64,000 bases of DNA from the NCBI GenBank assembly GCA_965644295.1, contig CBFFRP010000358.1, positions 170,064 through 234,063 of the forward strand, read 5' to 3'. This document shows positions 34,143-64,000 of this stretch, piece after piece. Position numbers and translations under genes: made by a program. Under the pieces are notes generated by a model. The model saw only the letters and a list, made by a program, of their open reading frames with translations, did no database searches and was not told the origin of the DNA. This DNA comes from Paraphysomonas bandaiensis (lineage: Eukaryota > Protista > Chrysophyceae). Every line of letters starts with the position of its first letter. Within the stretch, counting starts at the first letter, position 1.

Positions 34143-35059
34143 CTATGTACATGCGTATATCCATTGTTAGTTTTAAACATTGAGATAAAATGAGCACCAA
34201 ACCCACTGCGCTGCCAAACAATGACTATTTACTGCCATTTTATAAAATATATCCAGACTGTATTATAATGAGTGACTTCTCACTTACCATACCAGTGTTT
34301 GCGTTCATATCAATGCAATGATGAAATCCATAACTCATAATTAATATATATATTAAGTGAAAAACTTTGTTGTGACTAGCAGTAGATGCTAATATGTCAG
34401 TCATGAAATGTCAAGGTGCGTGGAGGTTGGTGGAGGGAGTGAGATTGGGCGGTAGGGGGCAGATGTAGGAAGGTTGTGCAGATGACCTTGTGAACAGCAA
34501 TCTGCGTACCTGACGGAGGAGATACGGTTTGCCCTTTCTTGCGCTTCACTCATAGTAGAGGCTATTATGGTGAGGTCGCCAGCAGAGGCGAGTTGTCTGT
34601 GTCGTCCGGGCCGGGGGTGACACTGTGGGAGGTGGCGTCTGTCCTCAGTCCTCATCCACCTTGTCAGAGTAGATGTTATCCTCAGTCCTCAGGAGTTGCC
34701 GGGTAGGGAGCATGATGGCGTTTATAATATGCTCAGGAGAAGGTGATGTGCAAGTAGTCTCTACGTCTAAATCTAACCGAGAGACGGGGATGTCGTAGAG
34801 GGTAGAGGGTTACCCATGCGCATATAGACTCTGTGCCGTGTTGCGTGACGCCTCTGGCCGCTTCGTAGCCCAGATTGATATTATTAGTGAAGTGTCTGTC
34901 TTGTTCGAGAATACTACTTAGTAGTATGGGTTCAATATTATTCACCACAATGGGAGTTCACGAAAAGGGTAGCCCCCCGGCGTACAAGATTTCCAAACCA
35001 GTTAACGACAGCAAACCAAGCAAGTCAGCAGATGTCAGGTATATCAACATTCTGCTTGA

Positions 35060-36051: not shown

Positions 36052-36277
36052 AGTCGAGGTAATACCAAAACCTGGGTTTTGATGTAAAACCTGGTGAAAT
36101 TTTTGATGATGGTTGGAAAAGGGTATAACTATGCACAATAAGTAACTATGAAGATAATAACAGTATGAAAAGTATTATTTATAATATTTTTTACTAATTT
36201 CTTCCATATTACTTCAGTTTTACAGCAATAAAAGTCACCGACTACACATATATATTACATACAGTTCACAAGTATGA

Positions 36278-36640
36278 ACTATAACCATCTCACTATACAC
36301 CACTTTACCATCTCACTAAACATCACTATACCATCTCAGAATACACCCACATACCATCTCACTATACACCCATATACCATCTCACACCCATATACCATCT
36401 CACTATACACCCATACCATATTACTATGCATCACTATACCATCCCACTATATTATACCACTATACCATCTACTGTATACCACTATACCACCTAACTATAC
36501 ATCACTACACTATCTCACTATACACCCATATACCATCTCACACCCATATACCATCTCACTATACACCCATACCATATTACTATGCATCACTATACCATCC
36601 CACTATATTATACCACTATACCATCACTATCACTATATTA
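36278..36640. repeat. C/A/T-only minisatellite (CACTATACCATCT / CACTATACACCCATATACCATCT units)
   Basis: Almost G-free degenerate repeats with a ~165-bp higher-order duplication; second array at ~41422-41808. Confidence 0.9.
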
Positions 36641-36641
36641 T

Positions 36642-37190
36642 ATTCGGACGCCACATATCCAGCTCACTGCTCGAACATCAGTTCCACGTTCTCGAAAAAT
36701 CCGTAACCTCTATCCTCCTTCCCCTATATGGTGGAGGGCTCCGCATGCTTCGAAACAGAGGTCTCAGACATCACAACACAGACACGGCATCAGTAACACC
36801 GATTACGACCCCACCACACTCACAGCAACGCCCGTCGCAGGATACTCACCCGACACCAAAAATACTCCAACTACTCCTAGCGACATCCACCCCAAGAATT
36901 CTATCCGCTGCAAGAGTCCGAACCCGACAGAGACAAGCACCACCACTCCGGAAACAACTCCTCCTTACTTGTGGTCGAAATCCCAACTCGACAACCAGCA
37001 CCATCTACACCACCGACTTACACTCTCATATACATCTAGCCCCAACCATCCCCCGTAAAACTCACGATACAGGCCCGGCAGACACACTGCCCAAAGGCAG
37101 ACCCCCCGATTAACCTCACTGCAAGGGACGGTTGAACCATGGTGCTCGCAGCGATGCACAAGCAGTCCCGAGACGGTAGCTGATACCACT
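36642..37190 (+). mobile_element. 3' end fragment of a non-LTR (LINE-like) retrotransposon
   Basis: Continues the CCHC-bearing reading frame seen at 41810-42181 (shared 36642-36744 = 42079-42181); ORF ends KGRPPD* at 37113, followed by a short structured 3' UTR. Confidence 0.65.
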
Positions 37191-39420: not shown

Positions 39421-40399
39421 GATATGAATTAGTTTTTAGTGAAACGGAAATAATATATTGAATGAAAAGATCTTGTCTATCTAAGATCATTAAATCTTGA
39501 TTGGTAGAAGTGACAATGACTCTATCATAAACCACAATGAGTAATGAGAGAGAAATATCAAAATTTTAATCAATGAGAGAGTCGTGTATATTACAAGTTC
39601 AGTTTATTACTTTTAGTGCAAAAAGTGGCGATACTAAATTAGTAAATCGAATAACTACTATTACTACTACTCACTCTCGCTTAAAGGTAAGGGCATGCTC
39701 TGATACGTTGATTCTGCGGAAGAGCTATTAGCCAGTGACTTAGTAGCCAAAATAATCGAAAGTTTTATGGGTGAAATACAGTATTAATTATTAATTGGTG
39801 GAACTCAGCGAACAATTTACAAACTTCAAAATTTGAGAGTTTTGATGTGTGGAGATATTGACCGTCTAAACGGTATACTCTAAGAATAATCGAATTAGAA
39901 GAACTCCCTACCGATGGAGTAAAAATTTACACTACAAATGGCACAGGAATCACGATTGGATTTAAAGCAACTGTACACTAATCGCTATTTAAAATATAAC
40001 CCTTCTTACAATATGAGATGCCTCAACAAAGTTGGACTCGCACCTTTTTTTGGTGTTCTGGGGGATAAGTACCGGGTATACTTCTCCGGGAAACTGACGT
40101 GAGCCGCATATATAGTCAGCAAATATAGTTCTGTCCACTCATAGCCAAAATGCTTGTGTGTGGTACAAAGGACACTAAGAAGTGTCACTTGTGTAGACAT
40201 CTTTCGACTGAACCCACCTCCGGGGTATTGGGCTGCTTGCTGTAGTCAAGCATCCGGGAATGGGCCCACCTCAAGGGCATCCTGGATATTGTGCTACCTG
40301 CTGAAGTCGAGTTCGGCTAGTTCACCTTAAGGACAGAGAGTGAAAGTAGTTTCACCTTGGTACTTGCGGTGACGCACACGAAGCATTCGTAGCGCTAAA

Positions 40400-40727
40400 T
40401 TGTAGGATATCAGAGGTAAGCAATATATATATATGCTAAAGTAGTTCTTACTCTTAAACGCCTATTGCTAATAATCAGACATTCACTACTTACAATGAGA
40501 TGGTAACTGCTAGAAAATGACATATCTGAACAATAATGCTTCTACTCTATGCTTAGATTATAACTTAGAAACATATAGTAACAGATAATCAATATCACTT
40601 GTCATTCACTGTCAATCGCCAAATTCTCGTAATACAGTTCATCACTTCTGTATTCTTCCATTACCAGTTATGATTCAAGTACTGTTGAACTATAGCTTTT
40701 AATTGCTCTCAACTAGCAAACTCAACA
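40400..40727 (-). mobile_element. Copia-derived fragment: LTR start at 40727 and family 3'-region motif at ~40452
   Basis: Reverse complement TGTTGAGTTTGCTAGTTGAGAGCAATTAAAAGCTATAGTTC; GTAGGATATCAGAG and CTCTTAAACGCCTATTGCTAATAAT shared with 35080-35130. Confidence 0.55.
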
Positions 40728-40871
40728 GTAATTATTACCCGACAACGGGTAAGTCTAAAGAACCACACAATATATCTATATAGGAAAGTCTAATTATTAC
40801 ATGAGAACGGTTGTGTACAGAAACTAGTTTATATCTATAGATTAACTACAGTAATAACTAGATTTGCTAAA

Positions 40872-41190
40872 TACTACTAGTGGCGGGCAACCGTCTCGGG
40901 ACTGCTTGTGCATCGCTGCGAGCACCATGGTGCAACCGTCCCTTGTATTGAGGTTAGTCGGGGGGGGGTCTACCTTTGGGCAATGTGTCTGGCTGGCCTG
41001 TGCCATGGGTTATGTGAGGGGTGGATGAGGCGAGATGTATATGAGAGTGTAAGTCGGTGGTGGAGATGGTGCTGGTTGTTGAGGTGGGGTTTCGGCCACA
41101 AGTAAGGAGGAGTTGTTTCCGGAGTGGTTGCGCTTGCCTCTGTCGGGTCTGGACTCTTGCAGAGAGTGTAGTTCTTGGGGTGGATGTCGC
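40872..41190 (-). mobile_element. Inverted, diverged copy of the LINE-like 3' end
   Basis: Reverse complement aligns with 36880-37176 (..KQLLLTCGRNP..KGRPPPD* plus 3' UTR); ends CCAC-TAGTAGTA, a possible (TAG)n tail. Confidence 0.75.
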
Positions 41191-41195
41191 CTGGA

Positions 41196-43172
41196 AGTCG
41201 AGGTAATACCAAAACCTGGGTTTTGATGTAAAACCTGGTGAAATTTTTGGTGATGGTCGGAAAAGGGTATAACTATGCACAATAAGTAACTATGAAGTTA
41301 ATAACAGTGTGAAGAGTATTATTTATAATATTTTTTACTAATTTCTTCCATATTACTTCAGTTTTACAGCAATAAAAGTCACCGACTACACATATATATT
41401 ACATACAGTTCACAAGTATGAACTATAACCATCTCACTAAACACCACTATACCATCTCAGAATACACCCACATACCATCTCACTATACACCCATATACCA
41501 TCTCACTATACACCCATACCATATTACTATGCATCACTATACCATCCCACTATATTATACCACTATACCATCTACTGTATGCCACTATACCACCTAACTA
41601 TACATCACTACACTATCTCACTATACACCCATATACCATCTCACACCCATATACCATCTCACTATACACCCATACCATATTACTATGCATCACTATACCA
41701 TCCCACTATATTATACCACTATACCATCTACTGTATACCACTATACCACCTAACTATACATCACTACACTATCTCACTATACACCCATATACCATTTCAC
41801 TATACACCTACGTATGGGACAAATCATACGCGATGGGCAGAAACCAAGCCAAAGGAAAAACCGGGCCTGATCACATAACAACGGCCTCAGCATGCGCAGA
41901 CTGTGCACTCCCAATCGACAACATGGCACACATGCTTCTCACCTGCACACACCTGCTCCCCCATCCCTGGTTTCACACCGCCATAATCAAACTAGCAAAA
42001 GCCGCATGGAATCCACACACACCCCAGGCTGAGCGCTACTGGACCGGCCACATTACTGCCACACAATTGACCGACGCATTCGGACGCCACATATCCAGCT
42101 CACTGCTCGAACATCAGTTCCACGTTCTCGAAAAATCCGTAACCTCTATCCTCCTTCCCCTATATGGTGGAGGGCTCCGCACGGAGGAAGAGATACCACG
42201 AAAGTGCACGAGCAGGGTAAGTAATACTGTTCATAAAGATGGTGACGGGGTCGTATGTCGTATATATGCGGTATTGTTCTGATTATTGTTGTGCGTTGTT
42301 ACTATACACTGCACTAACTGTGTATATATGATGGTGTAGGAGAAGTGCAACGGGAAGAAGAATGTTGTCAACATTCGTGGCGACATATCCAACGACGACC
42401 CGGAGGCGGAGGAAGAGATACCACGAAAGCGCACGAGCAGGGTAAGTAATACTGTTCATAAAGATGGTGACGGGGTCGTATGTCGTATATATGCGGTATT
42501 GTTCTGATTATTGTTGTGCGTTGTTACTATACACTGCACTAACTGTGTATATATGATGGTGTAGGAGAAGTGCAACGGGAAGAAGAATGTTGTCAACATT
42601 CGTGGCGACATATCCAACGACGACCCGGAGGCGGAGGTAGAGTTACCACGAAAGCGCACGAGCAGGGTAAGTAATACTGTTCATAAAGATGGTGACGGGG
42701 TCGTATGTCGTATATATGCGGTATTGTTCTGATTATTGTTGTGCGTTGTTACTATACACTGTACTAACTGCTTATGATCCTTCACCTGCTTATGATCCTC
42801 CACCTACTAGCAATGTGCCCCCAGCGGCTGTTGCCGCGTCGTTTCCGAGCATAGGTACTAATACTACTGTAAGTAGTAGTGGTAAAGATAGCTATATGCG
42901 TATGCAATGTATCCGAAATCAGGCTATTCGGTTGGAGCGTTTGCAGTCTCAAGCGAAGCAGATGTAGCTATATGAGAATATGATATTACAAAACACAAGT
43001 AATAATAGCAGGGCCAACTTGTAACGCAATAAATACTGCTAATAACAACTATACTTGCGACTTTTTCTTTACCTTTAACCTCTCAGATACAAATTACAGT
43101 AAAATAATAACTCAATACTTAGATATGAAACCTGGTGAAATTGCTTTACCAGGTTTTGGTATTACCTCGACT
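41196..43172 (+). mobile_element. Composite non-autonomous TIR element, copy B (both 24-bp TIRs intact; Kolobok-like AG..CT ends)
   Basis: AGTCGAGGTAATACCAAAACCTGG (41196-41219) and its exact reverse complement (43149-43172), followed by TTTA; subterminal AAACCTGGTGAAAT repeats at both ends. Confidence 0.85.
41810..42181 (+). mobile_element. LINE ORF2 C-terminal fragment with CCHC zinc knuckle
   Basis: CADCALPIDNMAHMLLTC = Cx2Cx8Hx4C, typical of the post-RT zinc knuckle of non-LTR retrotransposon ORF2 proteins. Confidence 0.7.
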
Positions 43173-47228: not shown

Positions 47229-47601
47229 TGTTGAATTTTCTGGAGAATGTTGTCCTGAGTTCTCTGCTGTGTTTCTAGATAGTTTGTAGAATGTAAGGGG
47301 CTCTTAGTAAGTTGATTTTTTGTTCTGTATTCTGCATGTTATCCCTCTTTGTTACATGGCTTTGCATGATAACACACGTAGGGAGGTGTCCTTATATAAG
47401 AGTTCAAGGGTGCTTGGACTTTCTTCTTTACTATTATCTATTATTACCTTACTTTGTTATTGTTATATACATACACATCAGTAGCTGCACCCGGAGTTTA
47501 TACCTCGGGTCAGGTTACAACTATTATTTTCATATAACGGTCATAATTCAAATACCTTAGAACTACAGCTTTTAATTGCTCTCAAACAGCAAAACGCAAC
47601 A
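47229..47601 (-). repeat. Solo LTR (373 bp), copia family
   Basis: On the minus strand begins TGTTGCGTTTTGCTGTTTGAGAGCAATTAAAAGCTG (as at 35812) and ends TTCAACA; flanks AATAT / TATAT fit a 5-bp TSD with one mismatch. Confidence 0.75.
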
Positions 47602-50689: not shown

Positions 50690-52692
50690 AGTCATATGCT
50701 TGGATATGATATGTATATCTTATGTTATAACAAGATTGGCATTTTTTTGCAACAGTTGGAGCCCACCCTATTGTAATTATTACTAATGCAATGCATGTAT
50801 TAGTTGTACTTTTTTATAGCAAGTATGTTATATATTGCTATTTCAAAGACACTCAGTTTGCACTCTTGAGGAAATAGAATAGTTCAGTGCAATCACTTAT
50901 TTTCAGTTATTAGTTCTAATATAGAAAATCAACTAAGTATACGATATAGAGAAACACTGTATTACCCTTAACTCGATATACTGTTATCCCGAGAATGTGT
51001 TTGAATGTGCGAATATTGAATAAGTGTGTTCAAGCCTTCACTAAACACTTATACAAAACAAAGAATTTTATCCCGCTGGATAACTCTCCCACATCCCACA
51101 TGTGCTGAATGAATTATTAATTATTAGTACATCATTATTTTGTTTCTTGGTCGATAAAGTAAATTGGTCATCTTTTTCGTGTCAATTTTATCGGTATTCT
51201 TCTTGTTATAATCATTAAATAAAAAATAAATATATAGCTTTAACTAGTCACTAGTCTACACTGTGCATTGTAGATTCTAGCAGAGAGCTGCTGAAAGCAA
51301 CTTAGAATCCTTTATACTCAGGGGAATGTGATTTCGATAAAATTTGATGCTAAACGTAGTCTACGTGATCAGAATACAAGTAATGAATGTACGACAAATT
51401 CTTCTTCCTCCATGAACACAAAGAGTTGTTTAAGGTTTAAGCTGCGTTAAGTTAAATGTCCTAGTGATTGCATTTTGTGGGGGTAAAAAGTAGCAGTCGC
51501 AAACTATATTGTTGAAAACATAAGCTTTATTAATAGTTCCGGACACAATTCACACTAAACAAGTCTACTGTATTATATTGTTCCCTATTACTAAATGTAT
51601 GTACAAAGTAGGGTTATCTATATCTAACTGTCTGTAGCATTCAGTGAAAGTAGTTCTGGTTTCGTAAACCTAGAATTATAACAAGAGTAGTAGTGAGTAA
51701 TTTGATCTGAAATCACAATTGGCGTTCTTAAAATGCCCGACACCAAGAGGTTGATTCTATGGTATCAGTTACAAATCAAATATCACTGTTTTGGACTCTA
51801 TTGATTCCCTTAGTGATAGCTAAAACTTGCCATTATGTAAGCTGTTCTGTATTGCTGCAAGCACTATTGTTTCTATTAATGTTGGATTATTGATGTGAAG
51901 GTATACTCATTAACGGCCTGTCAGTGACATGATTTTAGTTTTACGGCTATATAAACTGAATGCGCTTTTCTCTTGTCCCGGCTTTATTTTACTAGAGGCT
52001 TTCTACATCCCACACCCTCTTTATAGGTTGCACTGGAAGCACATGAATGGTGCACTTTAATATGCTTGAGCACTTATGTCGTAACTATCTCACCTCCGGA
52101 TTCATATCCTGTTGATTATCCACTTCAAAGTGAGCACTGCTGGCTGTCTCAGCTTCGTCGTCCATTGTCGTTTGTTCACATCTCTTCCTCTTCTTTTCCA
52201 TGTCTTCCACTTGTAGAATATGCTGGAGAGTAACTTCCACTTCGTGACATCTTATTTTCTGTCTGCCCATAATCAAATAAGACTACATCAAGCTCACTCC
52301 ATTATATTGCACTGTTACTATTTACCACTGTGCCATTGAATGTCCCTACTCACTAACGGTTTTGGTAACATGATCAAGATTCCGTGCTAGAAATTTGTTG
52401 TTTTAAGACATTTCTGGATTTCTAGAAAACCAAAAAGTGAGTACACAAAAAATTATTGGAATAGTCGACTTCGTAGAAGTACAGTACAGTATACGGTATA
52501 CCCTGCTGTGCTGCTGAGCTCCTCTGTGCAGTCACACATACAGAGTATGCCATTATGGTATGGTACAGATACAGTACATCCACATGTACATACTGGCTGT
52601 TGTATGTGTCACAGTTCATAGTATAATATATCTTGACCCACCCGCAAGCCAACACCTCTTGCGTGGACAGCTGGCTAGTCATCCATTCGTCA

Positions 52693-54045
52693 ATGATATA
52701 CACATTGATTGCACACTCCCTGGTATGGCCAATTCGTGCTGTAACGCCGTTGATGTTCATCATGTGTCCACTGCTGTCTGCGGAGGCGTTTGTTCGGTCT
52801 CGCTCCCGCTCATGGGGCCGTTACATACTCATTGGGTACAGTGCCCTGGAAATAATATTTTATATGTGGTTCCGTAGATCACTAAAGCGTGCGCAGAAAC
52901 GTCATCCGCCCCCTTATTCACTTCCTTCCAGGCGAGAGGAGCTGTGGGAATCAATGACCTCTGCGCCCCTGAACAACGAGAGCCCTCTAAATTTTTTAAG
53001 AACCTGGACTGCTCCACTTCCATTGGAGAGATGTGGAAAAGGTGCAATGAAGGAGATGCTTTCTGTTTGTTTTTTCAATCAGAAGTACGATGAGGTATCA
53101 GCGAGTGACTCAAAAGAGGTGGATGAATATATTCGTCGCATTGAGGCCATAGAAAATTTTAAGTTTCAGTCAAGTCATCCTTCCGATGCCCCTCCAATAC
53201 ACAACTTAATTGCTGATCCAGTAGTTGCGTATCATCGGCCCTTAGTTTACTATGCTACAACAAGTCTGACTGATTTTATGTCAGACATGTGTATTTACCT
53301 TCATGGCTTCAGACGACATAAAATTGGATGTATGAGCTACTGGGTCAAGCAATGTGATGTTCCTCCGAATGAACAACTTCCACCATATGTTTTTGTTCAT
53401 GGGGTTGGCATAGGTCTCGCTACGTACCTTCCTTTTCTCTTGCAGCTTGTACGGCAGAAGCAATCGTCGCATCGTACAATAATGTTGATAGAGCTTCCCC
53501 ATGTGTCGATGAAGTTAAATGTTGAAACTGTTCCGACAATGAAGCAAATCGCTGACTATACTGAAGAAGCCATGACTTTGTTCCGATTGAAACCAGCGGT
53601 TTGGGTTGCTCATTCTCTGGGTACGTTTGTTTTCGCAGCCGTAAATCGACTTAAAAGGCATCTAGTCAACAGTGTCGTACTACTAGATCCCGTTTGCTTT
53701 TTGCTTTATGAAGCAACTACTATGAATAACTTTTGTTATTGTACTCCAACCACACCCATTGAAATCATACAGCAGTATCACATCTGCAAAGAATTAACCA
53801 TCAGTCATTATTTCCACCGACACTTTTGGTGGCAAGAATGCGTTCTTTTTAGTAGAGATATACCACCAAATTGTGTAATTTTTATATCGGAGCTGGACAA
53901 TATATTCGACACAAGTCGTGTTATTGAGTACTTAAATATGGCTGGAAGTGATGTTAGAATATTGCCAGGACAGGGTCATGGTGAATGGCTAATCCATTGG
54001 AAATCAACTGCTCGAATACTTGAAGTGGTGACTTCGATCGCATAA
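52693..54045 (+). CDS. Alpha/beta-hydrolase fold protein with N-terminal hydrophobic segments, intronless
   Basis: PYVFVHGVGIGL (oxyanion region), VAHSLGT (nucleophile elbow), LLDPVCF, GQGHGEW (His); first ATG 52693 within ORF 52633-54045. Confidence 0.8.
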   Translation: MIYTLIAHSLVWPIRAVTPLMFIMCPLLSAEAFVRSRSRSWGRYILIGYSALEIIFYMWFRRSLKRAQKRHPPPYSLPSRREELWESMTSAPLNNESPLNFLRTWTAPLPLERCGKGAMKEMLSVCFFNQKYDEVSASDSKEVDEYIRRIEAIENFKFQSSHPSDAPPIHNLIADPVVAYHRPLVYYATTSLTDFMSDMCIYLHGFRRHKIGCMSYWVKQCDVPPNEQLPPYVFVHGVGIGLATYLPFLLQLVRQKQSSHRTIMLIELPHVSMKLNVETVPTMKQIADYTEEAMTLFRLKPAVWVAHSLGTFVFAAVNRLKRHLVNSVVLLDPVCFLLYEATTMNNFCYCTPTTPIEIIQQYHICKELTISHYFHRHFWWQECVLFSRDIPPNCVIFISELDNIFDTSRVIEYLNMAGSDVRILPGQGHGEWLIHWKSTARILEVVTSIA

Positions 54046-56585: not shown

Positions 56586-58010
56586 TATCGAAGTAACTAT
56601 AAAATGTTATTCTGATTTACAATATGGCTATGCGACACTTTAACACCGCATTGGTAACACTAGAGATATCAATGTAGTTAAATACCCTACAGTACAATAA
56701 TATGATTTACGTGCTACAATGAAGAGTAGAATCAAGTTTGACGGTTTAAGTCTAATCATGGCGTTTCTGTGATAATAGTGTTGGTGAACTACGTTATGTA
56801 CATTATATAAGTAGTTAGTAGTAGTTATTTTGTCTACAAAATTGTAACGACTACGGGTGATTGAGCCTCGCTATCATGACTAACATTGCTGGTCTTATCA
56901 TCCCTGTCCATGTGCACAGGTGATGTGGGTAGGATAGTCTTCTCACAACACTCTTCACTTAACTTCCTCTTCTTACTCTTTACTTCGCTACTTCTTAACT
57001 TTCAACTCAACTACGATATCAACTTTCACTATTATAATATCTAAAACTCCATATCCTTCTACCTATATCCCCATAGTTAATTCTAGAAGTGGTTTCCCAG
57101 CCATAAATAGCTAGTTTTCTACTTCCAGAAATAATCATATAGAAATCCCTTAACACCCTGCTAGATCTTTCTCTGCCCTACGATGGCAAATACCGTTCAA
57201 CACAAAGTTTCTCCTTATTAACCAGCTTTAAGCTCAATGTCCCTATTAAGGGTGTGGATGAGTCATGTCAGTGTGCCTAGGGCCTCTTCTCCCTCTCTTC
57301 GGCCACATTTTGCTGATCACCTCGTCTCCGACAAATCTCTTGTTTTACCACGTTGTACACGTTCCAAGCCTCACTGCCTGGCTTTGCGACTTCCACCCAA
57401 CCTAACGGCTTCGGCTAAACCACGTGCCTGCACTAATGCAGCGCTTACCGCATTCATATGCCATCACATCAGTAGACATCATAGTCTCACCTATCGAATT
57501 CTACGGTTACAACCACTCAAAACGTGGCTCGTGCGAGCAGGTCCACGCAAAAGATCCTCTGGTGCTCTCCATATGGTCACAGAATACTCTCGAACCCTCA
57601 CAACTGAGCTACAGGGCTGCCTCCTGATGTCCACACAAAACAACCCAACATGGTTTATCTGTGGTCTATGCATCCAGCAGGTTACCCCCTCATTCTGTTC
57701 ACCTATCACTCCCTCAGCCCATTCCTCTTATTGGACAGACACTGTATTCCGCATACGGTATATTCGGCTACTGTACTACAGTGCCCTACAGGATGTATAC
57801 CACACAAAAACGGTGCTAGCATGCGGAACACCACGTAGCCCCGGACCCCAACAATACCCTACCAACCCACACCCACTCAATCTTGCTGGTTATGAGTATA
57901 TCACCTATGCAAGGCCCCAAAGTTCACGCTTAAGTCTCTTGCGAAACAACACTCGGTTCACATACAGATATACACCAACACTCTTTAGAAGCAACTTCGA
58001 CACAATTTCA

Positions 58011-59781
58011 ATGAAACGTGAAACAAATTCCAACACTTCCAGAACCTTCACCCCGAAGTTTGTTCTTCCCCCCTCCTATCAACCAACCAACATTGATGCG
58101 CAGATCAATAATGCTATCAGAGAACAGAAGAAAGCCAAAGCTGACACTCCCCAGCTACAGCTCCCATCGGTACGCACCTTTCTGGGATGGGAAAATGACC
58201 TACCTGTGGGAGAGTACAAAACACTCGTCCTTACAAACATAAAAGCTGCTGATGATGCCACCTTCCTGGGGATAACACACTACCTTATCCATGAGTTGGG
58301 GTTTCCCATTCAACCCCCTACCCCCCAAGACATCGCTACTTTCAGGGCAGCCAAGGATGCACGAACGTGTTCAGACTTACCTGCTCCCACAGCGAGTAGG
58401 GTAGTCCGAGCGTTCAACCTAGGCAGACCTGGGTACGAAGTCCGACAGGGCATGGGAGCGAATGTTACCGCTGACTCATGTATGTACTCCTCCCCTCTAT
58501 GCTTTGACCTCCATGTAGAAACGGGCACATCAGTCGATGACAAAGGCCTCCTTCGGACCGAACGCCGACATGTTCAGATATCACTTTTCCGAACGCCACG
58601 AGAACTCTTCGTGGGTCGCACCAAGGATGAGCCCTCGCTGATACCAGTGGCGGCTATATATGGGCTACATGCAAACTCAGCGCACACCAGACCTGCACAT
58701 GCCTTTAGGTTACGAAACACGCTGGATATGCTTCTCCGAACGGGAGGTTTCCCCACGCCACCTCTATACGAAGTATTCTGGACTCTAACACACTATAAAA
58801 AGGCAAGACTCGAGCCACTGACAAAACATATAGGTTCTATCAGATTCTATTACTCCACGATCCCATTCACGATCAGGATCTAAGAGCTAAATTCTATAAA
58901 GCACTCTTCAATAATGAAATAGGAGGACATGTCGAAATCAACCTCGGCTCACTCTGTGTTGTAGAATGGTCAGCACTGAAACACCCACGCAAAAGCAGTC
59001 CAACTGGACACCGTCTCAAGAACTCTTCCACATCGCTGTCTGCTCTGAAACACTCCTATCTCCCATCCAAGTCTGGCAAGCCTGTGAGGCCATAGGTATC
59101 CCATCCACGGACATAGAGGACATCATTTGGACCGCCCGCAACCCACTCACAAGCGGGCGCAAAGAAAAAGAACGCTTAGTTGAACAAACCTACATTTACC
59201 TTGACGACAGGAATACCAAGATCAAACTCTGCTGGGAAATCTCACGCACAGGTATCGTGCCTTTACTGCGCAAAGCTCTGGGTGACGAAACTCTAAGGCT
59301 CCTCTATCACACCATAGCAGTCCCCCCTGGCCTCCCTACTCAGCGGTTTCTATACGGCCTCCATGAGGCCCCAGACACAGCAACAAACGCCCCTCCCATA
59401 ATACCGCCTCCAACGTCCCTTCAACCCTTCGGCCCAACTGTTGCTCCACAAATGCAGACCGATACACCGCGATCGTACACTCCCAAACGACAGCGACAGA
59501 TGGACACATCCCCATCAACAGAGCCAGCACCAGCTCCCACCTGCCCAGAGCTCTGCGAAATAGCTCTACACATCGCTTCAGATCTTGTACCTCTGTCAAA
59601 AATCCATGCCATCCTCGCGCAAATGGAAAACGCGGTTGCAGCTCTCTATGAGATCGATGCTGGGGCGACTCTCACGGTACTTGATTACTATAAAAACAAG
59701 GTAGATCACAGTATCCCAGAAAGGTCCTCAGAAGAACACTCTAGGGTGGACTCGGACATCTTTGGCTCCGACTCCAACTGA
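58011..59781 (+). pseudogene. ORF1-like protein of the element, broken by two frameshifts near 58860-58990 (frame open upstream to 57237)
   Basis: ORFs 57237-58883 and 58966-59781 are bridged by a third-frame stretch IHDQDLRAKFYKALFNNEIGGHVEINLGSLCVVEW; no recognisable domain; Pro-rich linker then helical C-terminus. Confidence 0.5.
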
Positions 59782-59928
59782 CGCCTACTGGACTGGGACA
59801 CAACGAACATCAAACGTACACTCATAGAAGTGTCCGCAGCTGCTCACACGTGGTTATCCCCCAGTCCACACTTACATATCCATAGTTGGCCCTCACCTGA
59901 CACAACGACCTTCGCCCGTAGCAACCAC

Positions 59929-62900
59929 ATGCGTCCACCACGTAAACCGCCAGACAAACAGTCGAGATCCACCAGCGTACATCCCACGAAAAGGCACCAA
60001 GGACCGCACTATTCCTGTGATAATAGTGGTGATGGACCACGAAAACGGCCGGCCTCGACACAACGTAAGCGAAACAACCTCCGGCGGCTCAGTCGCAAAC
60101 GAACTCTGCAACAATTTCGTGAAGGAACAATCCAGTCCCTCCCTCCACACATACAACGCCAACAGACACGAAACAAGCTCCGCATCCGTGCCCACAACAA
60201 GCAAGCATGGCGAGAGCATTTACAACACCTGGCACAACAGTGTGTAGACACACACAACATCGTGACCACTCCTATACCTGACACAGCACCCACAGCTGTT
60301 ACAGCACCCCCCCGTCCAGAAGACTCCACACATACTATTTGCCTCCCTCCGCCCACAGTGGAGGACGAACAAGAGAGAACAATCACTGACACAAGTGTAC
60401 TGCCTCAACTATTTGTGCCGCACCCTCTGCCAGCTGCCTTCACGGACCCCGGACTGCAGAATTGGTCCTTCTACTCGCCCAGCGGTCTGTTAGCCATTGC
60501 CATACACGAAGAGGTGGTTCACAGTGTCATGTCCATGCTACAATCGAGGCACGCTTTAGAACGCATAGAACAGCACCTCAGATGTTCGCTTGAGGAGGGG
60601 AAAATGCTGGTTGCACGTCACTACACACACACAGAATACAACAACACACCAATGGAGGGCTTCTGCGGACTAGCTGCTATTGCCGCAATATACCACAAAC
60701 AACCGGAGGAGGACCACTACCCGTATTTAAATCCCGATGATCCAGCCTCGAAAGCAAAACTGCTCCAAGTCATTCAGACAAGCAGGACGGTACTTAGTAC
60801 CTACACGCTCGCTGAAGCCAAGATGCTTAACTTTGCATGCATCCGGAAGAAGCTCCGACAGCAGCTAACAACGTACAACAAAGCACTACGCCGCAAACGA
60901 CCAACTGCTGTCGGAATACCCCCAGAGCAATGGGGCTACACAGACATCATAGCCCTCCTGGCAGAAACCCTGAGTATACGAATTCGTATCTGGCAAGATT
61001 CACCAGTGGACCTTGGCCACAACTGGGCGTACTGGTCTACCCACCATTCCTCCTTCCTTCCACAAACTCAATTCCTTCCATCCTATGATGTGTTTTGCTC
61101 CAACGACCACTTCTTCCTGGACACCAAATACCCGGTGGAGTTGGAACTACACGCGCTACTCGAGAGAATTCCTGACCTCGTCATCATGCGTCTCCAAAAT
61201 GTGTTGCAATATCATTCCAAGGGAATGCAAGGAGTCCATCGTGCCAGGTCCATCAACCATCCCTCCCACGCCCTTCAGGGGAAGGAATTCTCTTCCGATA
61301 ACAGCGGTGACGGACCCAGCAAATCCACCCACACATTACCCTTACCCACTAAGGATGCCACCACACCGTATGCAACTCTATTTGACTATTTCCCAGTCAA
61401 ACGGAGGCCACCTACCACCAACCCTACTCAACTGAACACCATGCGAACTCCAGCATTAGCCCCAGACGGCCCATCCTCACACTCCACTACCACTCTTGAC
61501 ATCAGGCCGGATGCACTGCCCAAGGATATTGCCACACACCCCCGACACTACACAGAGGGCTGGGGTCACACGCCCTTTCACTCCGATCTGCTGAACAACT
61601 GGGTTAGATATGATAAAACCCAAACCATTGCTGCCTCCCCACAGGGAAACCTTTTAAAAGAAATATATGCACACATGCTATCCCCTGCCTGTTCAGACAT
61701 ATGGGAAGGATTCATAGCCAAGGCTTCCAGGACGGACAACTATGATCTCATGATATCATTCACGCTACCAGAGCACAAATTGGACACCACGCACAGCGCC
61801 CTACTAGTTGCCCAGCATCTCGCGAATGGCAACAAACCCTGGGCAGACTCCACTCATGTTGTATCTAGGCATGTGCGGACCCTTTGCCTGACAAAGGGTA
61901 TTCCCTCAACAGCCACTGTTAGTCTCCGTAAGACACTCATGCAATATGAATCCTCGACTCCACACACAGGACTACATCTAGACACGGAGGACTTCCAACT
62001 GCTACTCGATCTTCTCTCCATACCATACAGACTATGGGACGCTGTTCAACCGCACCTGGCGCCTGGTTGGGCACAGCTGTCACCATTCTCCAGACAGGCA
62101 CTAACAGTGCACGCTTCTACCAACAATGTGGTAACCCATGACATCATACGCAGCCAGCATGGGTTTCACATACTCAATGCAACAAATATCCTCACCTGCA
62201 TCATGCACGCTCTAACACGGACTCAGGAGCGGCTATCCTGTTTTCTACAACACCAGACCTCCAGACAGAGCACCAACATCCTCTGGACTTCTGAGCCGTC
62301 AACTGTACCACCTATGCTACATGAGCACAGAGAGCAACAGGAACAGAGGGAAGTAATTGCAGTCTCCTTGTCACCGAGAGCTCGACGTCAACTACGACAG
62401 ATGAACCCCACGGACCGTCGACAACTCAGGCTCCATATGTGCGACATGAGCAGAGTCTATCGCCTCACCCTCAGACCCTCAGCCCTTCGCACACAACAAC
62501 ATATCCCTAGTGATGGGTACTGCGCATACAGCACACTCTATCATCTGCACATTCTTGCTTCAAGCAGGCGACACACTCGCTCCTGTCTGAAATTAGACCT
62601 CAAACAACGCAAGGACCGTCACACGCTAGCATCTTTCATAAATACATTAGGCACCCAAGCGTTCGACACAATGCAACGGGAGTGCATGGCCCATCACACA
62701 CTTCAGCCACTACGACATAAGTTAGATCACGCACAGGCCGCACATTTAATACCTACCAAAACAACATACACTACGGAGGACGACATAACTCACTGGCTCT
62801 CAGTGCGAGAGGTCCACCTTTTAGCCTCTACTATCAACCCCTGCACGACGTGGGCGCAAAATGGTAATTACCTCAGCATTGTAGGCATCCCTACAGACAA

Positions 62901-63558
62901 AGTAGCTTATAACATCGCATGGAAGGTGGACGAACTTAGGGACGCTATTCGTGATAACTACTACCATGTCATACTACAAGATGCTCACTACTTCCTCTTA
63001 GACCCTGCCGGTCTTTCTACTGCCCTAGACAACGCCCTACTATCTCTTGAAAACACCTTGGCCACCAGTATACTCTCAACGGCTGACCCCATCGCTCCAC
63101 CTACACTTCCCGCGGACTCAATCACGAACAACAATAGGACATCAAAGATGACCAGCACCAGAACAACCTCATCAAGCAGCACCAAGTTAGCACGAACAAA
63201 TCGACAGATTCTGCAGGCTTCAACCCCTGGAGCACTACCATCGCACAAGAAGATGCAGTTGAAACACGCCCAAACTGCGTTGACAAGTCGATGCCAGCCA
63301 ACCCGGAAAGCCAAAAAGGTCGTAAATTACGATGAAAGTGACCAACCAACGAACCTTCACAACTCACACCCAACCACGACCACACGAACGATCAGACCAA
63401 CTCCAGCACTAGATACCACCGGCTGGGACAGGACTGGTCAAGAAAGTTCTACATTGCGTACGCCGATAACACTGCCAAAGGACTATCCCTTTATGCGAAG
63501 AACACATTCCCAGCAGACGTCATCATTGCTGAGTACAAAGGCAAACGCTATCCACTAA
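59929..63558 (+). CDS. ORF2 polyprotein with three OTU-like cysteine protease repeats and two DNSGDGP motifs
   Basis: OTU1 TPMEGFCGLAAI..WGYTDIIALLAETLSIRIRIWQ..SNDHFFL; degenerate OTU2 ASPQGNLL..LDTEDFQLLLDLLSIPYRLWD..QHGFHIL; OTU3 IPSDGYCAYSTL..WLSVREVHLLA..QDAHYFLL. Confidence 0.7.
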   Translation: MRPPRKPPDKQSRSTSVHPTKRHQGPHYSCDNSGDGPRKRPASTQRKRNNLRRLSRKRTLQQFREGTIQSLPPHIQRQQTRNKLRIRAHNKQAWREHLQHLAQQCVDTHNIVTTPIPDTAPTAVTAPPRPEDSTHTICLPPPTVEDEQERTITDTSVLPQLFVPHPLPAAFTDPGLQNWSFYSPSGLLAIAIHEEVVHSVMSMLQSRHALERIEQHLRCSLEEGKMLVARHYTHTEYNNTPMEGFCGLAAIAAIYHKQPEEDHYPYLNPDDPASKAKLLQVIQTSRTVLSTYTLAEAKMLNFACIRKKLRQQLTTYNKALRRKRPTAVGIPPEQWGYTDIIALLAETLSIRIRIWQDSPVDLGHNWAYWSTHHSSFLPQTQFLPSYDVFCSNDHFFLDTKYPVELELHALLERIPDLVIMRLQNVLQYHSKGMQGVHRARSINHPSHALQGKEFSSDNSGDGPSKSTHTLPLPTKDATTPYATLFDYFPVKRRPPTTNPTQLNTMRTPALAPDGPSSHSTTTLDIRPDALPKDIATHPRHYTEGWGHTPFHSDLLNNWVRYDKTQTIAASPQGNLLKEIYAHMLSPACSDIWEGFIAKASRTDNYDLMISFTLPEHKLDTTHSALLVAQHLANGNKPWADSTHVVSRHVRTLCLTKGIPSTATVSLRKTLMQYESSTPHTGLHLDTEDFQLLLDLLSIPYRLWDAVQPHLAPGWAQLSPFSRQALTVHASTNNVVTHDIIRSQHGFHILNATNILTCIMHALTRTQERLSCFLQHQTSRQSTNILWTSEPSTVPPMLHEHREQQEQREVIAVSLSPRARRQLRQMNPTDRRQLRLHMCDMSRVYRLTLRPSALRTQQHIPSDGYCAYSTLYHLHILASSRRHTRSCLKLDLKQRKDRHTLASFINTLGTQAFDTMQRECMAHHTLQPLRHKLDHAQAAHLIPTKTTYTTEDDITHWLSVREVHLLASTINPCTTWAQNGNYLSIVGIPTDKVAYNIAWKVDELRDAIRDNYYHVILQDAHYFLLDPAGLSTALDNALLSLENTLATSILSTADPIAPPTLPADSITNNNRTSKMTSTRTTSSSSTKLARTNRQILQASTPGALPSHKKMQLKHAQTALTSRCQPTRKAKKVVNYDESDQPTNLHNSHPTTTTRTIRPTPALDTTGWDRTGQESSTLRTPITLPKDYPFMRRTHSQQTSSLLSTKANAIH

Positions 63559-63869
63559 CAAAGCTGAGTCAGTCTACAAGGCGTTCTGATTACATAGTTC
63601 AAGACAGTACTGGTACCTTCGCAATAGATGGCCTTGACCAAGTCCGACAATGTGTAACATGCGAAGCTGGGTATATTAATGACCCCCTAGCCACAAACAT
63701 GGCTAATGTCAAGTTTGTCACGAAAAATAAACGCCTCTATATCCGTACAATACGTTCCATTGCTAAGGATGAAGAACTTCTCATCAACTACGGGCATCAT
63801 TATTGGTGTGATCAACGCTGGCCACTTGAGATATTAACCAGCCAGGGCTGGCATACGACAGCGACATAG
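63342..63869 (+). CDS. SET-domain lysine methyltransferase, in the -1 frame relative to ORF2 (not in the ORF track)
   Basis: Manual translation of frame 3: KGLSLYAKNTFPADVIIAEYKG..SDYIV..AIDG..AGYINDP..ANVKFV..LYIRTIRSIAKDEELLINYGHHYW, matching SET motifs GxGLFA..I.EY.G, ARFINH, N, EELxxxYG..YW. Confidence 0.85.
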   Translation, partial: PTNEPSQLTPNHDHTNDQTNSSTRYHRLGQDWSRKFYIAYADNTAKGLSLYAKNTFPADVIIAEYKGKRYPLTKLSQSTRRSDYIVQDSTGTFAIDGLDQVRQCVTCEAGYINDPLATNMANVKFVTKNKRLYIRTIRSIAKDEELLINYGHHYWCDQRWPLEILTSQGWHTTAT

Positions 63870-64000
63870 GCGGTGCCAATATCGCAGTATGGGACAGACT
63901 CCTCTGCAGACAAGAGTGGAACTCCCACAGAGACCTCCAGCAGCATCCCCAAGGATCCCTCGGGAGCAGCCATGGACCTGACTCTCCACATGGAACACAA

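What the first reader, a model, noticed from the sequence alone, without database searches (positions are those of the whole stretch)
56940..64000. Retroelement-like unit encoding a chromatin/ubiquitin-editing polyprotein (OTU x3 + SET) with internal processing motifs
Seen: an intronless ORF1/ORF2 layout. ORF2 reads [GP motif]-basic NLS-like stretch-OTU-[GP motif]-dead OTU-OTU-(frameshift)-SET, and another frame stays open to the window end. Established: OTU domains are deubiquitinases, SET domains methylate lysines (histones), and some transposons carry single accessory protease or chromatin domains. Inference: a mobile element, most likely a giant non-LTR retrotransposon whose endonuclease/RT lie beyond 64000, that releases separate deubiquitinase and methyltransferase products to remodel chromatin or evade silencing. 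I do not know of a described element combining multiple OTUs, SET and this motif, but I could not search.
Basis: partly seen in the sequence, partly recalled or inferred. Interest (0 to 1): 0.9.

Follow-up and report, generated by a model that had tools for sequence, protein, structure and literature searches.

The report
Giant protist LINE carrying OTU and SET domains
The region is the first 6.8 kb of a slightly decayed copy of a 12.6 kb jumping gene (a LINE) from a marine protist. Intact copies fuse three ubiquitin-protease-like (OTU-fold) domains and a histone-methyltransferase-like (SET) domain to the usual endonuclease and reverse transcriptase.

Summary

- **Identity.** Window 57168-64000 is 98.7% identical to a 13 kb metagenome contig (L012). 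L012 carries ORF1 (846 aa), one in-frame UGA, and ORF2 (3114 aa).
- **ORF2 order.** Motif, OTU-like D1, motif, Cys-less D2, OTU-like D3, SET, APE, RT, an RNase-H-like region, and a CCHC finger.
- **SET** passes Pfam.
- **OTU** fails every sequence-profile search. Two AlphaFold models nevertheless match only OTU proteases in the top 50 PDB hits.
- **Decay.** The "frameshift" before SET is a 1-nt deletion private to this copy. Six more indel sites break ORF1 and the 3' part.
- **Left boundary.** Homology starts at 57168, not 56940.
- **Motif.** [FY][ST][SC]Dx[ST]GDGP is conserved in relatives down to about 30% identity, always upstream of an OTU-like domain. It is not a canonical 2A, and its function is unknown.
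- **SET release.** SET is fused in frame to APE-RT, so a separately released methyltransferase is not supported.

Precedents exist: cryptophyte Dualen LINEs with SET plus a C48 peptidase, and algal ORF2p proteins with 2A-like peptides or N-terminal DUB domains. This is a new variant of a known kind. The contig is not human.

The parts
57168..64000 (+). The 5' 6.8 kb of one copy of the LINE (about 54% of a ~12.6 kb element). It runs off the window end.
   Evidence: 98.7% identical to L012:419-7250, with 78 substitutions and 11 indel columns. The same region is 97% identical to L001.
56940..57167 (+). It is not shared with the full-length copy L012, so its membership in the element is unproven.
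   Evidence: No BLAST match to L012 or L013.
57237..59778 (+). ORF1 (846 aa in the intact copy L012:488-3025). In the window it is split by 2-bp insertions at 58797-58798 and 58955-58956. No known domain was found.
   Evidence: Indels are listed. The last 508 codons are under purifying selection between L012 and L013 (pN 0.18 vs pS 0.70). Pfam and PDB searches found nothing.
59779..59781 (+). Single in-frame UGA separating ORF1 from ORF2.
   Evidence: The same layout and context (..GSDSN UGA CUN CUA CUG GAC UGG GAC) is seen in L012 and in L013, which shares about 70% nt identity.
59789..59868 (+). Candidate readthrough stem. UGGACUGGG, starting 8 nt after the UGA, pairs with CCCAGUCCA.
   Evidence: The same 9-bp stem appears in the MFE folds of L012, L013 and the window. 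The arms are identical in L012 and L013, while the interior is 61% identical. The z-scores are weak.
59782..63555 (+). N-terminal 1258 codons of ORF2. The intact ORF2 is 3114 aa from its first AUG, which lies at window 59929.
60007..60039 (+). Conserved motif 1 (HYSCDNSGDGP), followed by a basic stretch at 60040-60102.
   Evidence: The motif is conserved in L005, L007, L008, P0063 and P0090.
60415..61269 (+). OTU-fold domain D1. The putative catalytic Cys is at 60664-60666 and the His at 61108-61110.
   Evidence: AF2 model with pLDDT 79. Foldseek PDB top 50 are all OTU, with best E=1e-3. BFVD matches include named viral OTU-bearing proteins. In the model the Cys starts a helix and the His starts a strand.
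61285..61317 (+). Conserved motif 2 (EFSSDNSGDGP).
61570..62379 (+). D2, a paralogue of D1 and D3 without the catalytic Cys. The aligned His column is Gly.
   Evidence: It is still constrained (pN 0.33 vs pS 0.69).
62353..63054 (+). OTU-fold domain D3. The Cys is at 62521-62523 and the His at 62986-62988.
   Evidence: AF2 model with pLDDT 79. Foldseek PDB top 50 are all OTU, with best E=0.027 and prob 0.97.
63430..63431 (+). Site of a 1-nt deletion relative to L001 and L012.
63480..63794 (+). SET domain.
   Evidence: Pfam PF00856 at E=6e-10, above the cutoff. A family profile hits SET1/MLL, EZH2, SETD8 and vSET chains in the PDB. AGYIN[DE] and EELLxxYG are conserved.
63838..63980 (+). Four further indel sites (63838, 63850, 63904, 63980) that scramble the frame. 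The APE domain would begin at about 63988.
36232..37165 (+). Short, internally deleted copy of a sister subfamily. It has 23-bp G-free tandem repeats, then an ORF2 C-terminus ending ..KGRPPD*, then the 3'UTR box.
41422..42181 (+). Second sister-subfamily fragment: the same 23-bp repeats followed by the CCHC region (41% identical to L006 ORF aa 881-1019).
40860..40990 (-). 3' end fragment (..KGRPPPPD* plus the 3'UTR box).
40337..40415 (+). 3'UTR box fragment of the main subfamily.
   Evidence: 82% identical to the L002 3'UTR, which is 96% identical to L012:12406-12705.
34796..35039 (-). RT fragment of the family.
   Evidence: tblastn with P0081 aa 2140-2226 gives 56% identity.

Best explanation
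SHOWN.
- Window 57168-64000 is the 5' half of a slightly decayed copy of a ~12.6 kb APE-type LINE (non-LTR retrotransposon).
- The host is an unidentified marine protist, not human.
- Intact, near-identical copies encode ORF1 (846 aa, no recognisable domain, under purifying selection). A single in-frame UGA follows, then a 3114-aa ORF2.
- ORF2 is ordered: conserved ..SDxSGDGP motif, basic stretch, OTU-fold D1 (Cys/His intact), second motif, D2 (OTU paralogue without the Cys), OTU-fold D3 (Cys/His intact), SET, APE endonuclease, RT, a region with D-E-D-H-D spacing like RNase H, a CCHC finger, and a Pro-rich tail.
- The window copy carries seven frame-breaking indel sites.
- The family is transcribed, recently active and multi-copy. 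It comprises subfamilies down to about 30% protein identity that keep the motif-OTU-SET-APE-RT order.

INFERRED.
- The element moves by target-primed reverse transcription, using APE and RT.
- ORF2 is probably made by readthrough of the UGA (UGA-C context, then an 8-nt spacer and a conserved 9-bp stem). Unconventional reinitiation is the alternative, because no AUG is conserved.
- D1 and D3 most likely act as cysteine isopeptidases or proteases. One role would be removing ubiquitin-like marks that restrict the RNP, or that follow translation of a roughly 4000-aa product. The other would be cutting the polyprotein at the GDGP motifs.
- D2 would be a non-catalytic binding module.
- SET is covalently joined to APE-RT, so it most likely acts at the integration site, by methylating or docking onto nucleosomal lysines, and not as a free enzyme.
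For: Element identity:
- Extension into APE and RT.
- Two independent intact ORF2s from different contigs are 99.3% identical without gaps.
- No terminal repeats were found.
- The window holds 5'-truncated or internally deleted relatives.
- Related contigs come from JGI samples that I take, from memory, to be metatranscriptomes (L002, L003).
- Among solved structures the RT is nearest human L1 ORF2p (E=2e-7) and further from R2 (E=9e-3).

OTU fold:
-.
- Cys and His positions match the predicted helix start and strand start.
- The Cys and His boxes are conserved in L007, L008 and P0063.

SET.

Selection, L012 vs L013:
- pN/pS is 0.24/0.74 for D1, 0.33/0.69 for D2, 0.21/0.77 for D3 and 0.17/0.69 for SET.
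- Linkers are relaxed.

Motif conservation.
UGA and stem.
Host: the flanking gene at 52633-54042 is 99% identical to a protein from JGI sample 3300017004. Its named relatives are algae at 36-46% identity.
Against: - No sequence profile (Pfam, PDB) recognises OTU. Foldseek E-values are weak (1e-3 to 3e-2) and TM-scores are 0.27-0.50, so OTU rests on two predicted models built from one shallow 11-row alignment.
- The SET NH(S/C) box reads N-D/E in this family, so activity is uncertain.
- RNase H rests on motif order only. Pfam and a PDB profile search found nothing.
- No target-site duplication could be defined. The L012 junctions were compared only with a 77% identical paralogous empty site.
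- The RT clade was not resolved.
- The readthrough stem has no covariation and z-scores of about -1.
- All biochemical roles are inference.
Confidence: 0.8

Rival explanations
1. The GDGP motif is a cleavage site used by the element's own OTU-fold protease (D1 and/or D3). Cutting would release ORF1 plus its short extension, a free basic-OTU protein (D1), and the D2-D3-SET-APE-RT body. Papain-like and OTU-like proteases of RNA-virus polyproteins work this way.
For: - The motif always lies about 70-220 residues upstream of an OTU-like domain.
- It was duplicated together with the domain. The flanks of the two motifs are similar to each other, and L007 has one motif with two OTU-like domains.
- It sits in relaxed linkers.
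- Motif 1 lies 76-86 codons after the in-frame UGA, where a readthrough fusion would need separating.
- Deletion derivatives (P0084, L002) keep exactly motif1-D1-motif2 and then jump to the ORF2 tail.
Against: - From general knowledge, OTU and other papain-like viral proteases prefer Gly-Gly or small residues at P2-P1, and DUBs cleave poorly before Pro. ..SGDG/P fits badly.
- No motif lies between D3, SET, APE and RT.
- No experiment was done.
Confidence: 0.3
2. The GDGP motif is a divergent 2A-like ribosome-skipping or stalling peptide. [quoted passage not shown] The downstream OTU domains would counteract ubiquitin-dependent ribosome quality control.
For: - The position matches: the N-terminal region of ORF2, ending in Gly-Pro (Odon et al. 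2013, PMC3708506).
- A 2026 preprint screening proteins with 2A-like peptides reports LINE ORF2p with N-terminal Josephin or OTU DUB domains, and raises this DUB-stalling link (10.64898/2026.06.17.732966).
Against: - The defining D[V/I]ExNPGP is not met. Pro at -2 and Asn at -3 are replaced by Asp and Gly, and Glu by Ser/Thr.
- PMC3708506 reports that such non-conservative changes ablate recoding.
- The upstream tract is polar and basic, not the Leu-rich helix described for active 2As.
Confidence: 0.12
3. The family is a branch of the cryptophyte-type Dualen/RandI LINEs (SET + peptidase + APE + RT + RNH + CCHC + RLE) that has lost the restriction-like endonuclease and carries OTU-fold domains where Dualen-1_GCr carries a C48 peptidase.
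For: - The unusual combination of SET, cysteine peptidase, APE, RT, RNH-like region and CCHC, and the giant size in marine protists, match the domains listed for Dualen-1_GCr (PMC5029228).
- Dualen LINEs are reported in all surveyed cryptophyte genomes except Guillardia theta (PMC12747079).
Against: - No PD-(D/E)xK-like conserved residues follow the CCHC. Only about 100 structured residues follow it.
- There is no Peptidase_C48 hit.
- Among solved structures the RT is nearer L1 ORF2p than R2.
- No Dualen sequence was available for comparison.
Confidence: 0.3
4. It is a host gene, or a domesticated remnant, and not a transposon.
For: The window holds only one long copy. ORF1, D1-D3 and SET are under purifying selection.
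Against: - Near-identical copies with different flanks exist in several independent assemblies.
- The window has fragments on both strands, plus deletion derivatives.
- L012 was assembled at 54x coverage.
- The window copy itself is broken by seven indel sites.
Confidence: 0.02

Closest known systems
Cryptophyte Dualen LINEs (Dualen-1_GCr of Geminigera cryophila; Lescot et al. 2016, PMC5029228)
   Same: A giant single-polyprotein LINE of marine protists. It combines a SET methyltransferase domain and a cysteine peptidase with APE, RT, RNase H and a CCHC finger. It was found in Tara Oceans and MMETSP data.
   Different: Dualen-1_GCr is 5287 aa, carries a C48 (Ulp1-type) peptidase and a C-terminal restriction-like endonuclease. 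Here the peptidase-like domains are OTU-fold and present in three copies (one without the Cys), no RLE was found, and an 846-aa ORF1 precedes an in-frame UGA. No sequence comparison was possible.
LINE ORF2p with N-terminal DUB domains, found in a screen for proteins with 2A-like peptides (Haematococcus Josephin-ORF2p; Symbiodinium necroappetens OTU-ORF2p; bioRxiv 10.64898/2026.06.17.732966)
   Same: A deubiquitinase-type domain sits N-terminal to APE-RT in algal LINEs, and in the proteins of that screen a short Gly-Pro-ending peptide generally precedes the endonuclease.
   Different: Those peptides end in NPGP, while here the conserved end is GDGP with a polar upstream tract. The preprint mentions no SET and no tandem OTU copies.
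2A-like sequences in APE-type LINEs (Ingi/L1Tc, CR1, L2, Rex1, Crack; Odon et al. 2013, PMC3708506)
   Same: A short conserved peptide ending in G-P lies in the N-terminal region of ORF2. It was proposed to separate upstream functions from the ORF2 enzyme.
   Different: The motif here does not fit GD[V/I]ExNPGP, and it occurs twice.
OTU domains in DNA transposons (Ginger1 transposases, animal Helitrons/Helentrons; Bao et al. 2010, PMC2836005)
   Same: A transposable element carries an OTU-type cysteine protease as an accessory domain, with a proposed link to the ubiquitin pathway.
   Different: Those are DNA transposons whose OTU is recognised by Pfam PF02338 and present once. Here the element is a LINE, the OTU is recognisable only by fold, and there are three copies.
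Nairovirus vOTU and other viral OTU proteases (PDB 6dx3, 7jms, 3phw and others)
   Same: These are the best structural matches of D1 and D3. They are also OTU domains embedded at the N-terminal end of a very large polymerase polyprotein.
   Different: Sequence identity is 12-16%, TM-scores are 0.27-0.50, and there is no evidence of common descent beyond the fold.

Membership tests
APE-type non-LTR retrotransposon (LINE) | Apurinic/apyrimidinic-type endonuclease N-terminal to the RT, in one ORF | tested here: met
   Exo_endo_phos (E about 1e-9) and RVT_1 (E about 1e-14) lie in one ORF in L001, L012/P0081 and L013/P0063. The window itself ends about 12 nt after the APE start.
APE-type non-LTR retrotransposon (LINE) | No long terminal or inverted repeats | tested here: met
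   BLAST of L012:1-2000 against L012:11001-13017 found nothing.
APE-type non-LTR retrotransposon (LINE) | Multi-copy, with 5'-truncated or deleted copies sharing the 3' end | tested here: met
   The window holds 3' fragments at 36.2-37.2, 40.3-41.0 and 41.4-42.2 kb and an RT fragment at 34.8-35.0 kb. The 90% cluster of P0011 has 22 members.
APE-type non-LTR retrotransposon (LINE) | Target-site duplication flanking full-length insertions | tested here: inconclusive
   The L012 flanks resemble a contiguous 'empty' paralogue at window 35812-36232. At 77% identity no duplication could be read.
APE-type non-LTR retrotransposon (LINE) | Placement of the RT in a named clade (L1, I, Tad1, CR1, Dualen and so on) | not testable with these tools
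   No Repbase reference set was available. The only pointer is that the PDB nearest neighbour is L1 ORF2p (E=2e-7), ahead of R2 (E=9e-3).
OTU cysteine proteases (Pfam PF02338, MEROPS C85-like) | Match to the family sequence profile | tested here: not met
   No Pfam hit at E<=10 for any piece, nor at E<=0.1 for the intact ORF2. A family profile found no OTU chain in PDB sequences.
OTU cysteine proteases (Pfam PF02338, MEROPS C85-like) | OTU fold | tested here: met
   Two AF2 models (pLDDT 79). The top 50 PDB matches are all OTU domains in both searches, with prob up to 1.00, but E is only 1e-3 to 3e-2 and TM 0.27-0.50. BFVD matches include named viral OTU-bearing proteins.
OTU cysteine proteases (Pfam PF02338, MEROPS C85-like) | Catalytic Cys at a helix N-terminus and His at the start of a beta-strand, both conserved | tested here: met
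   In D1, Cys is model residue 84 (helix 84-93) and His residue 232 (strand 232-236). In D3, Cys is residue 57 (helix 57-71) and His residue 212 (strand 212-216). Both are conserved in L007, L008 and P0063. D2 lacks them. Superposition on the catalytic residues of a solved OTU could not be inspected.
OTU cysteine proteases (Pfam PF02338, MEROPS C85-like) | Isopeptidase or protease activity | not testable with these tools
   This needs biochemistry.
SET-domain lysine methyltransferases (PF00856) | Profile match above the curated threshold | tested here: met
   39.9 bits against a cutoff of 22.4 in the window. The match recurs in L001, L007, L008, P0081 and P0063.
SET-domain lysine methyltransferases (PF00856) | Cofactor and catalytic boxes (NH[S/C]xxPN and ELxxxY) | tested here: inconclusive
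   EELLxxYG, with its Tyr, is invariant. The NH box reads AGYIN[D/E] in all members. The canonical boxes are quoted from general knowledge.
2A / 2A-like ribosome-skipping peptides | C-terminal D[V/I]ExNPG|P | tested here: not met
   The motif is [FY][ST][SC]Dx[ST]GDGP in all lineages. The 2A definition is from PMC3708506.
Dualen/RandI LINEs | Both APE and a C-terminal restriction-like (PD-(D/E)xK) endonuclease | tested here: not met
   APE is present. After the CCHC finger the family alignment shows no conserved acidic/Lys triad, and only about 100 structured residues precede a Pro-rich tail. This was a motif-level test only.
Dualen/RandI LINEs | RNase H and CCHC downstream of the RT | tested here: inconclusive
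   A CCHC (C-x2-C-x8-9-H-x4-C) is present. D, E, D, H and D are invariant in an RNase-H-like order, but there was no Pfam or PDB profile hit.

The most novel reading that the evidence does not exclude
ORF1 and the 3100-aa ORF2 are translated as one product of about 4000 aa by programmed UGA readthrough. The conserved ..SDxSGDGP peptide would then be a previously undescribed self-processing or recoding signal. It would work either as an OTU-dependent cis-cleavage site or as a non-NPGP skipping/stalling element. It would separate ORF1p, a free nuclear OTU deubiquitinase, and a chromatin-writing SET-APE-RT integration enzyme.
Probability: 0.2. Interest if true: 0.75.

Novelty: new variant of a known kind. 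Interest (0 to 1): 0.55.

Why it matters
LINEs are usually thought of as minimal: ORF1p plus an EN-RT protein. This family shows that a LINE can carry, under purifying selection, a whole set of host-manipulating modules in one 3100-aa protein: two apparently active OTU-fold domains, one pseudo-enzyme copy, and a SET domain welded to the endonuclease.

If the activities are real, three things follow:
- It would be a compact natural system for asking how a retrotransposon uses ubiquitin removal and histone methylation during integration or to escape silencing.
- It would provide a new short peptide signal and a candidate readthrough element for studying how giant polyproteins are expressed.
- It adds to scattered reports (SET plus C48 in cryptophyte Dualen; Josephin or OTU on algal ORF2p) suggesting that accessory DUB and chromatin domains are a recurrent theme in protist LINEs.

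Tried and rejected
Searches that found nothing:
- Pfam on every ORF piece found no OTU.
- The search for homologous proteins with the 1242-aa ORF found nothing, because full-length relatives of 3100 aa fall outside its length window.
- The exhaustive phmmer search found only five fragments. Full-length proteins surfaced only through the listing of cluster members.
- PDB sequence-profile searches found nothing useful for the OTU-like domains, ORF1 or the RNase-H-like region.
- Both metagenome-contig scans (ORF1 C-terminal part; ORF2 N-terminus plus D1) returned nothing.
- Full-text searches for 'GDGP' and for SET in non-LTR elements gave nothing specific.
- Kojima & Fujiwara 2005 and Kapitonov 2009 are not held.

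Ideas rejected:
- I eyeballed a resemblance between the L002 3'UTR end and window 56850-56930 that would have suggested terminal repeats or tandem copies. BLAST did not support it.
- A programmed frameshift before SET: it is a private 1-nt deletion.
- A Helentron or virus: no Rep, helicase or capsid was found, and APE-RT is present.
- LTR element: no terminal repeats.

Other points:
- The window and all fetched loci are not human (protist-like gene-dense context, algal relatives of the flanking gene).

Full report
**1. What is in the window**

The + strand from about 57.2 kb to the window end is G-poor and A-rich (GC skew about -0.23). It carries three long ORFs: 57237-58883, 58966-59781 and 59830-63558 (1242 aa). 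A SET-bearing frame follows at 63342-63866, and another frame stays open to 64000.

The rest of the window is gene-dense with long exons: Mon2/Sec7-like, kinesin, LRR and alpha/beta-hydrolase. The hydrolase gene at 52633-54042 is 99% identical to a protein from JGI sample 3300017004. Its named relatives are algae at 36-46% identity: Phaeothamnion, Mesostigma, Chrysoparadoxa and Tribonema. The host is therefore an unidentified marine protist. The contig is not human.

**2.

- The peptide ..[YF]S[CS]DNSGDGP occurs twice, at 60007-60039 and 61285-61317. The first is followed by a basic stretch.
- Three domains follow. A local iterative search shows that they are paralogues.
- D1 and D3 keep a P..G.C box and an H[YF]F box. 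D2 lacks the Cys, and its aligned His column is Gly.
- SET is solid: Pfam E=6e-10, above the gathering score.

OTU is not supported by sequence. There is no Pfam hit even at E<=10, and no PDB hit with a family profile. It is supported by structure:
- The AlphaFold models of D3 and D1 have pLDDT 79 and pTM 0.76-0.77.
- Each returns OTU proteases, and nothing else, as the top 50 Foldseek PDB hits: nairovirus vOTU, Wolbachia OTU, otubains, A20 and OTULIN.
- The statistics are modest: best E=0.027 with prob 0.97 for D3, and E=1e-3 with prob 1.00 for D1. TM-scores are 0.27-0.50.
- The viral library gives the same picture: its named matches include nairovirus L, a tenuivirus L protein, flexivirus replicases and giant-virus OTUs.
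- In both models the conserved Cys opens a helix and the conserved His opens a beta-strand. This is the papain/OTU arrangement.

**3. It is a LINE, and a very large one**

The exhaustive protein search found only five fragments, but their contigs were informative.
- L001 is 97% identical to window 62648-64000. It continues in one ORF through SET, Exo_endo_phos (APE) and RVT_1.
- A search with that ORF found relatives at 35-97% identity.
- L006 carries the rest of ORF2: RT, a region with invariant D, E, D, H and D in RNase-H order, a CCHC finger, and a Pro-rich tail ending ..KGRPPDQKRR*.
- Cluster look-up then revealed full-length proteins that the length-limited searches could not see. P0081 (3114 aa) and P0085 (3111 aa) are 99.3% identical to each other. 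P0063 (3175 aa) is 63% identical to P0081.
- The contig of P0081 (L012, 13,017 bp, 54x coverage) is 98.7% identical to window 57168-64000.

The layout of L012 is:
- ORF1 at 488-3025 (846 aa).
- One in-frame UGA.
- ORF2, 3114 aa from the called start at 3176 (open from 3029) to 12517, with SET at aa 1185-1289, APE at 1355-1592 and RT at 2049-2342.
- A 3'UTR follows, with no poly(A) seen.

The flanks of L012 resemble a contiguous stretch at window 35812-36232. This places the insertion at about L012:279-12850, or roughly 12.6 kb. There are no terminal repeats. Among solved structures the RT is nearest human L1 ORF2p (E=2e-7) and further from R2 (E=9e-3).

**4. The window copy is decayed**

Relative to L012 the window copy has 78 substitutions and these indels:
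- +2 at 58797-58798
- +2 at 58955-58956
- -1 at 63431
- -2 at 63838
- +1 at 63850
- +1 at 63904
- -2 at 63980

L001 agrees with L012 for the indels within its overlap, from 63431 onward, apart from alignment placement near 63974-63980. Three consequences follow:
- The 'frameshift' before SET is a private 1-nt deletion.
- The 'frame open to the window end' results from further indels.

Homology starts at 57168. The stretch at 56940-57167 is not shared with L012.

**5. The family**

- L007/P0007 (about 36-45% identity) has one motif, two Cys/His-intact OTU-like domains, then SET, APE and RT in one ORF.
- L008 (26-39% identity) has the motif plus an OTU-like domain, a weak second SET, and another OTU-like domain plus SET, then RT.
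- P0090 (32% identity) also keeps the motif.
- The motif consensus is G[PKA]x[FY][ST][SC]Dx[ST]GDGP. It always lies upstream of an OTU-like domain.
- The duplication that produced D1 and D2, together with a second motif, is specific to the window's lineage and L013.

Between L012 and L013, non-synonymous divergence is far below synonymous divergence. The pN/pS values are:

| Region | pN / pS |
|---|---|
| ORF1 C-terminal part | 0.18 / 0.70 |
| D1 | 0.24 / 0.74 |
| D2 | 0.33 / 0.69 |
| D3 | 0.21 / 0.77 |
| SET | 0.17 / 0.69 |

The same holds for the APE, RT, RNH-like and zinc-finger regions, while linkers are relaxed. The accessory domains are therefore functional parts of the element and not passengers. 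D2 is probably a constrained pseudo-enzyme.

The window also holds sister-subfamily debris:
- Short internally deleted copies with 23-bp G-free tandem repeats joined to the ORF2 C-terminus and 3'UTR box (36232-37165 and 41422-42181).
- 3' end pieces at 40337-40415 and 40860-40990(-).
- An RT fragment at 34796-35039(-).

L003, from the same sample as the host gene, carries the same repeats upstream of a D2 homologue.

**6. How it most likely works**

Mobility by target-primed reverse transcription follows from APE plus RT; this is established for LINEs.

Expression of ORF2:
- The ORF1 stop is a single in-frame UGA in a context conserved at synonymous positions only.
- No AUG is conserved for ORF2. 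L012 reads HMRPPR where L013 reads HLRPPR.
- A 9-bp stem starts 8 nt after the UGA. Its arms are identical in the two subfamilies, while the intervening 62-65 nt are 61% identical.
- From general knowledge, UGA-C followed by an 8-nt spacer and an extended stem is the classic readthrough arrangement. The fold z-scores are weak (-1.0 to -1.4) and no covariation is available, so this is a lead and not a result.

The motif:
- It is not a 2A. The defining GD[V/I]ExNPGP is not met, and PMC3708506 reports that such substitutions ablate recoding.
- The upstream tract is not Leu-rich.
- Its position, 76-86 codons into ORF2 and again before D2, and its linkage to OTU-like domains fit a processing or docking signal. 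I rank OTU-dependent cleavage above 2A-like skipping, but neither is shown.

SET: it is in frame with APE-RT with no motif between them. It should therefore act as part of the integration enzyme, either writing or reading lysine methylation at the target. A released enzyme is not indicated. Its NH box is N-D/E, so catalysis is uncertain.

**7. Comparison with what is known**

- OTU domains are known in Ginger1 and Helitron DNA transposons (PMC2836005).
- Lescot et al. 2016 (PMC5029228) describe cryptophyte Dualen-1_GCr. It is a 5287-aa LINE protein with SET, a C48 peptidase, APE, RT, RNH, CCHC and RLE.
[quoted passage not shown] It speculates on a link between DUBs and ribosome stalling.

The present family shares the theme but differs in several ways:
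- Three OTU-fold domains that are invisible to sequence profiles.
- A non-NPGP motif.
- SET immediately before APE.
- No detectable RLE.
- An ORF1-UGA-ORF2 layout.

I therefore class it as a new variant of a known kind. I could not place the RT in a named clade.

**8. Verdict**

The functional story is only partly supported. Interest is moderate: a well-preserved, recently active, transcribed giant LINE with ubiquitin- and chromatin-related accessory domains and two candidate translational or processing signals worth testing.

Noticed in passing
window 59779-59868; L012:3026-3115; L013:1615-1707: ORF1 and ORF2 are in the same frame, separated by one UGA in a conserved UGA-CUN context. A 9-bp stem (UGGACUGGG/CCCAGUCCA) starts 8 nt downstream, and its arms are invariant between subfamilies that share about 70% nt identity. 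No AUG is conserved for ORF2. This looks like a programmed readthrough signal.
   Followed up: partly
L002:783-1189 (P0002); P0084: Deletion derivatives from different samples share one junction. Three residues after motif 2 (GDGPSKS) they join the last ~30 residues of ORF2 and the 3'UTR. P0084 encodes exactly motif1-basic-D1-motif2 (aa 1-466, 100% identical to P0081). This may be a non-autonomous element that expresses only the first OTU module.
   Followed up: partly
window 36278-36625 and 41422-41808; L003:1-1000: G-free 23-bp tandem repeats (ACTATACCATCTCACTATACACC, 15-17 copies) form the 5' part of a sister subfamily. In the window they are joined directly to ORF2 C-terminal and 3'UTR pieces. 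L008 also has tandem repeats upstream of its motif. They resemble the 5'UTR monomer arrays of other LINEs.
   Followed up: partly
window 37202-37819 and 42182-42770: A 225-bp tandem repeat (2.6-2.7 copies, 98% matches) with GGTAAGTAAT-like splice-donor strings lies directly 3' of both sister-subfamily fragments. The 36.2-37.85 kb and 41.4-42.8 kb blocks look like a segmental duplication.
   Followed up: no
window 35812-36232 vs L012:5-278 and L012:12851-13006: The two flanks of the full-length insertion in L012 are similar (77% for the 5' flank) to one contiguous stretch of the window, as if this were a paralogous empty site. The flanking sequence is itself repeated (also at window 47535-47601, minus strand).
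   Followed up: partly
window 40337-40415, 37130-37165, 40902-40937(-); L012:12575-12650: A conserved 3'UTR box (..GGTTGCACCTTGGTGCTTGCGGCGACGCACAAGCAGC..) with hairpin potential is shared by both subfamilies. The sister subfamily ends at ..CCCGAGACGGT without poly(A).
   Followed up: no
P0008 and P0067 (NCBI MBQ27685.1): Proteins annotated in GenBank as 'MAG: hypothetical protein [Nitrospiraceae bacterium]' are fragments of this eukaryotic LINE family (APE/RT and an OTU-like/SET part). A 7.3 kb protist contig seems to have been binned into a bacterial MAG.
   Followed up: no
L008:2344-3576 and L008:3377-7438: A distant relative carries two OTU-like domains and two SET-like regions (the first weak, E=0.01). 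This suggests a duplicated OTU-SET module.
   Followed up: no
P0081 aa 1592-2049 (beyond the window): About 450 residues lie between APE and RT, which I judge long for a LINE. They have no Pfam match but are strongly constrained.
   Followed up: no
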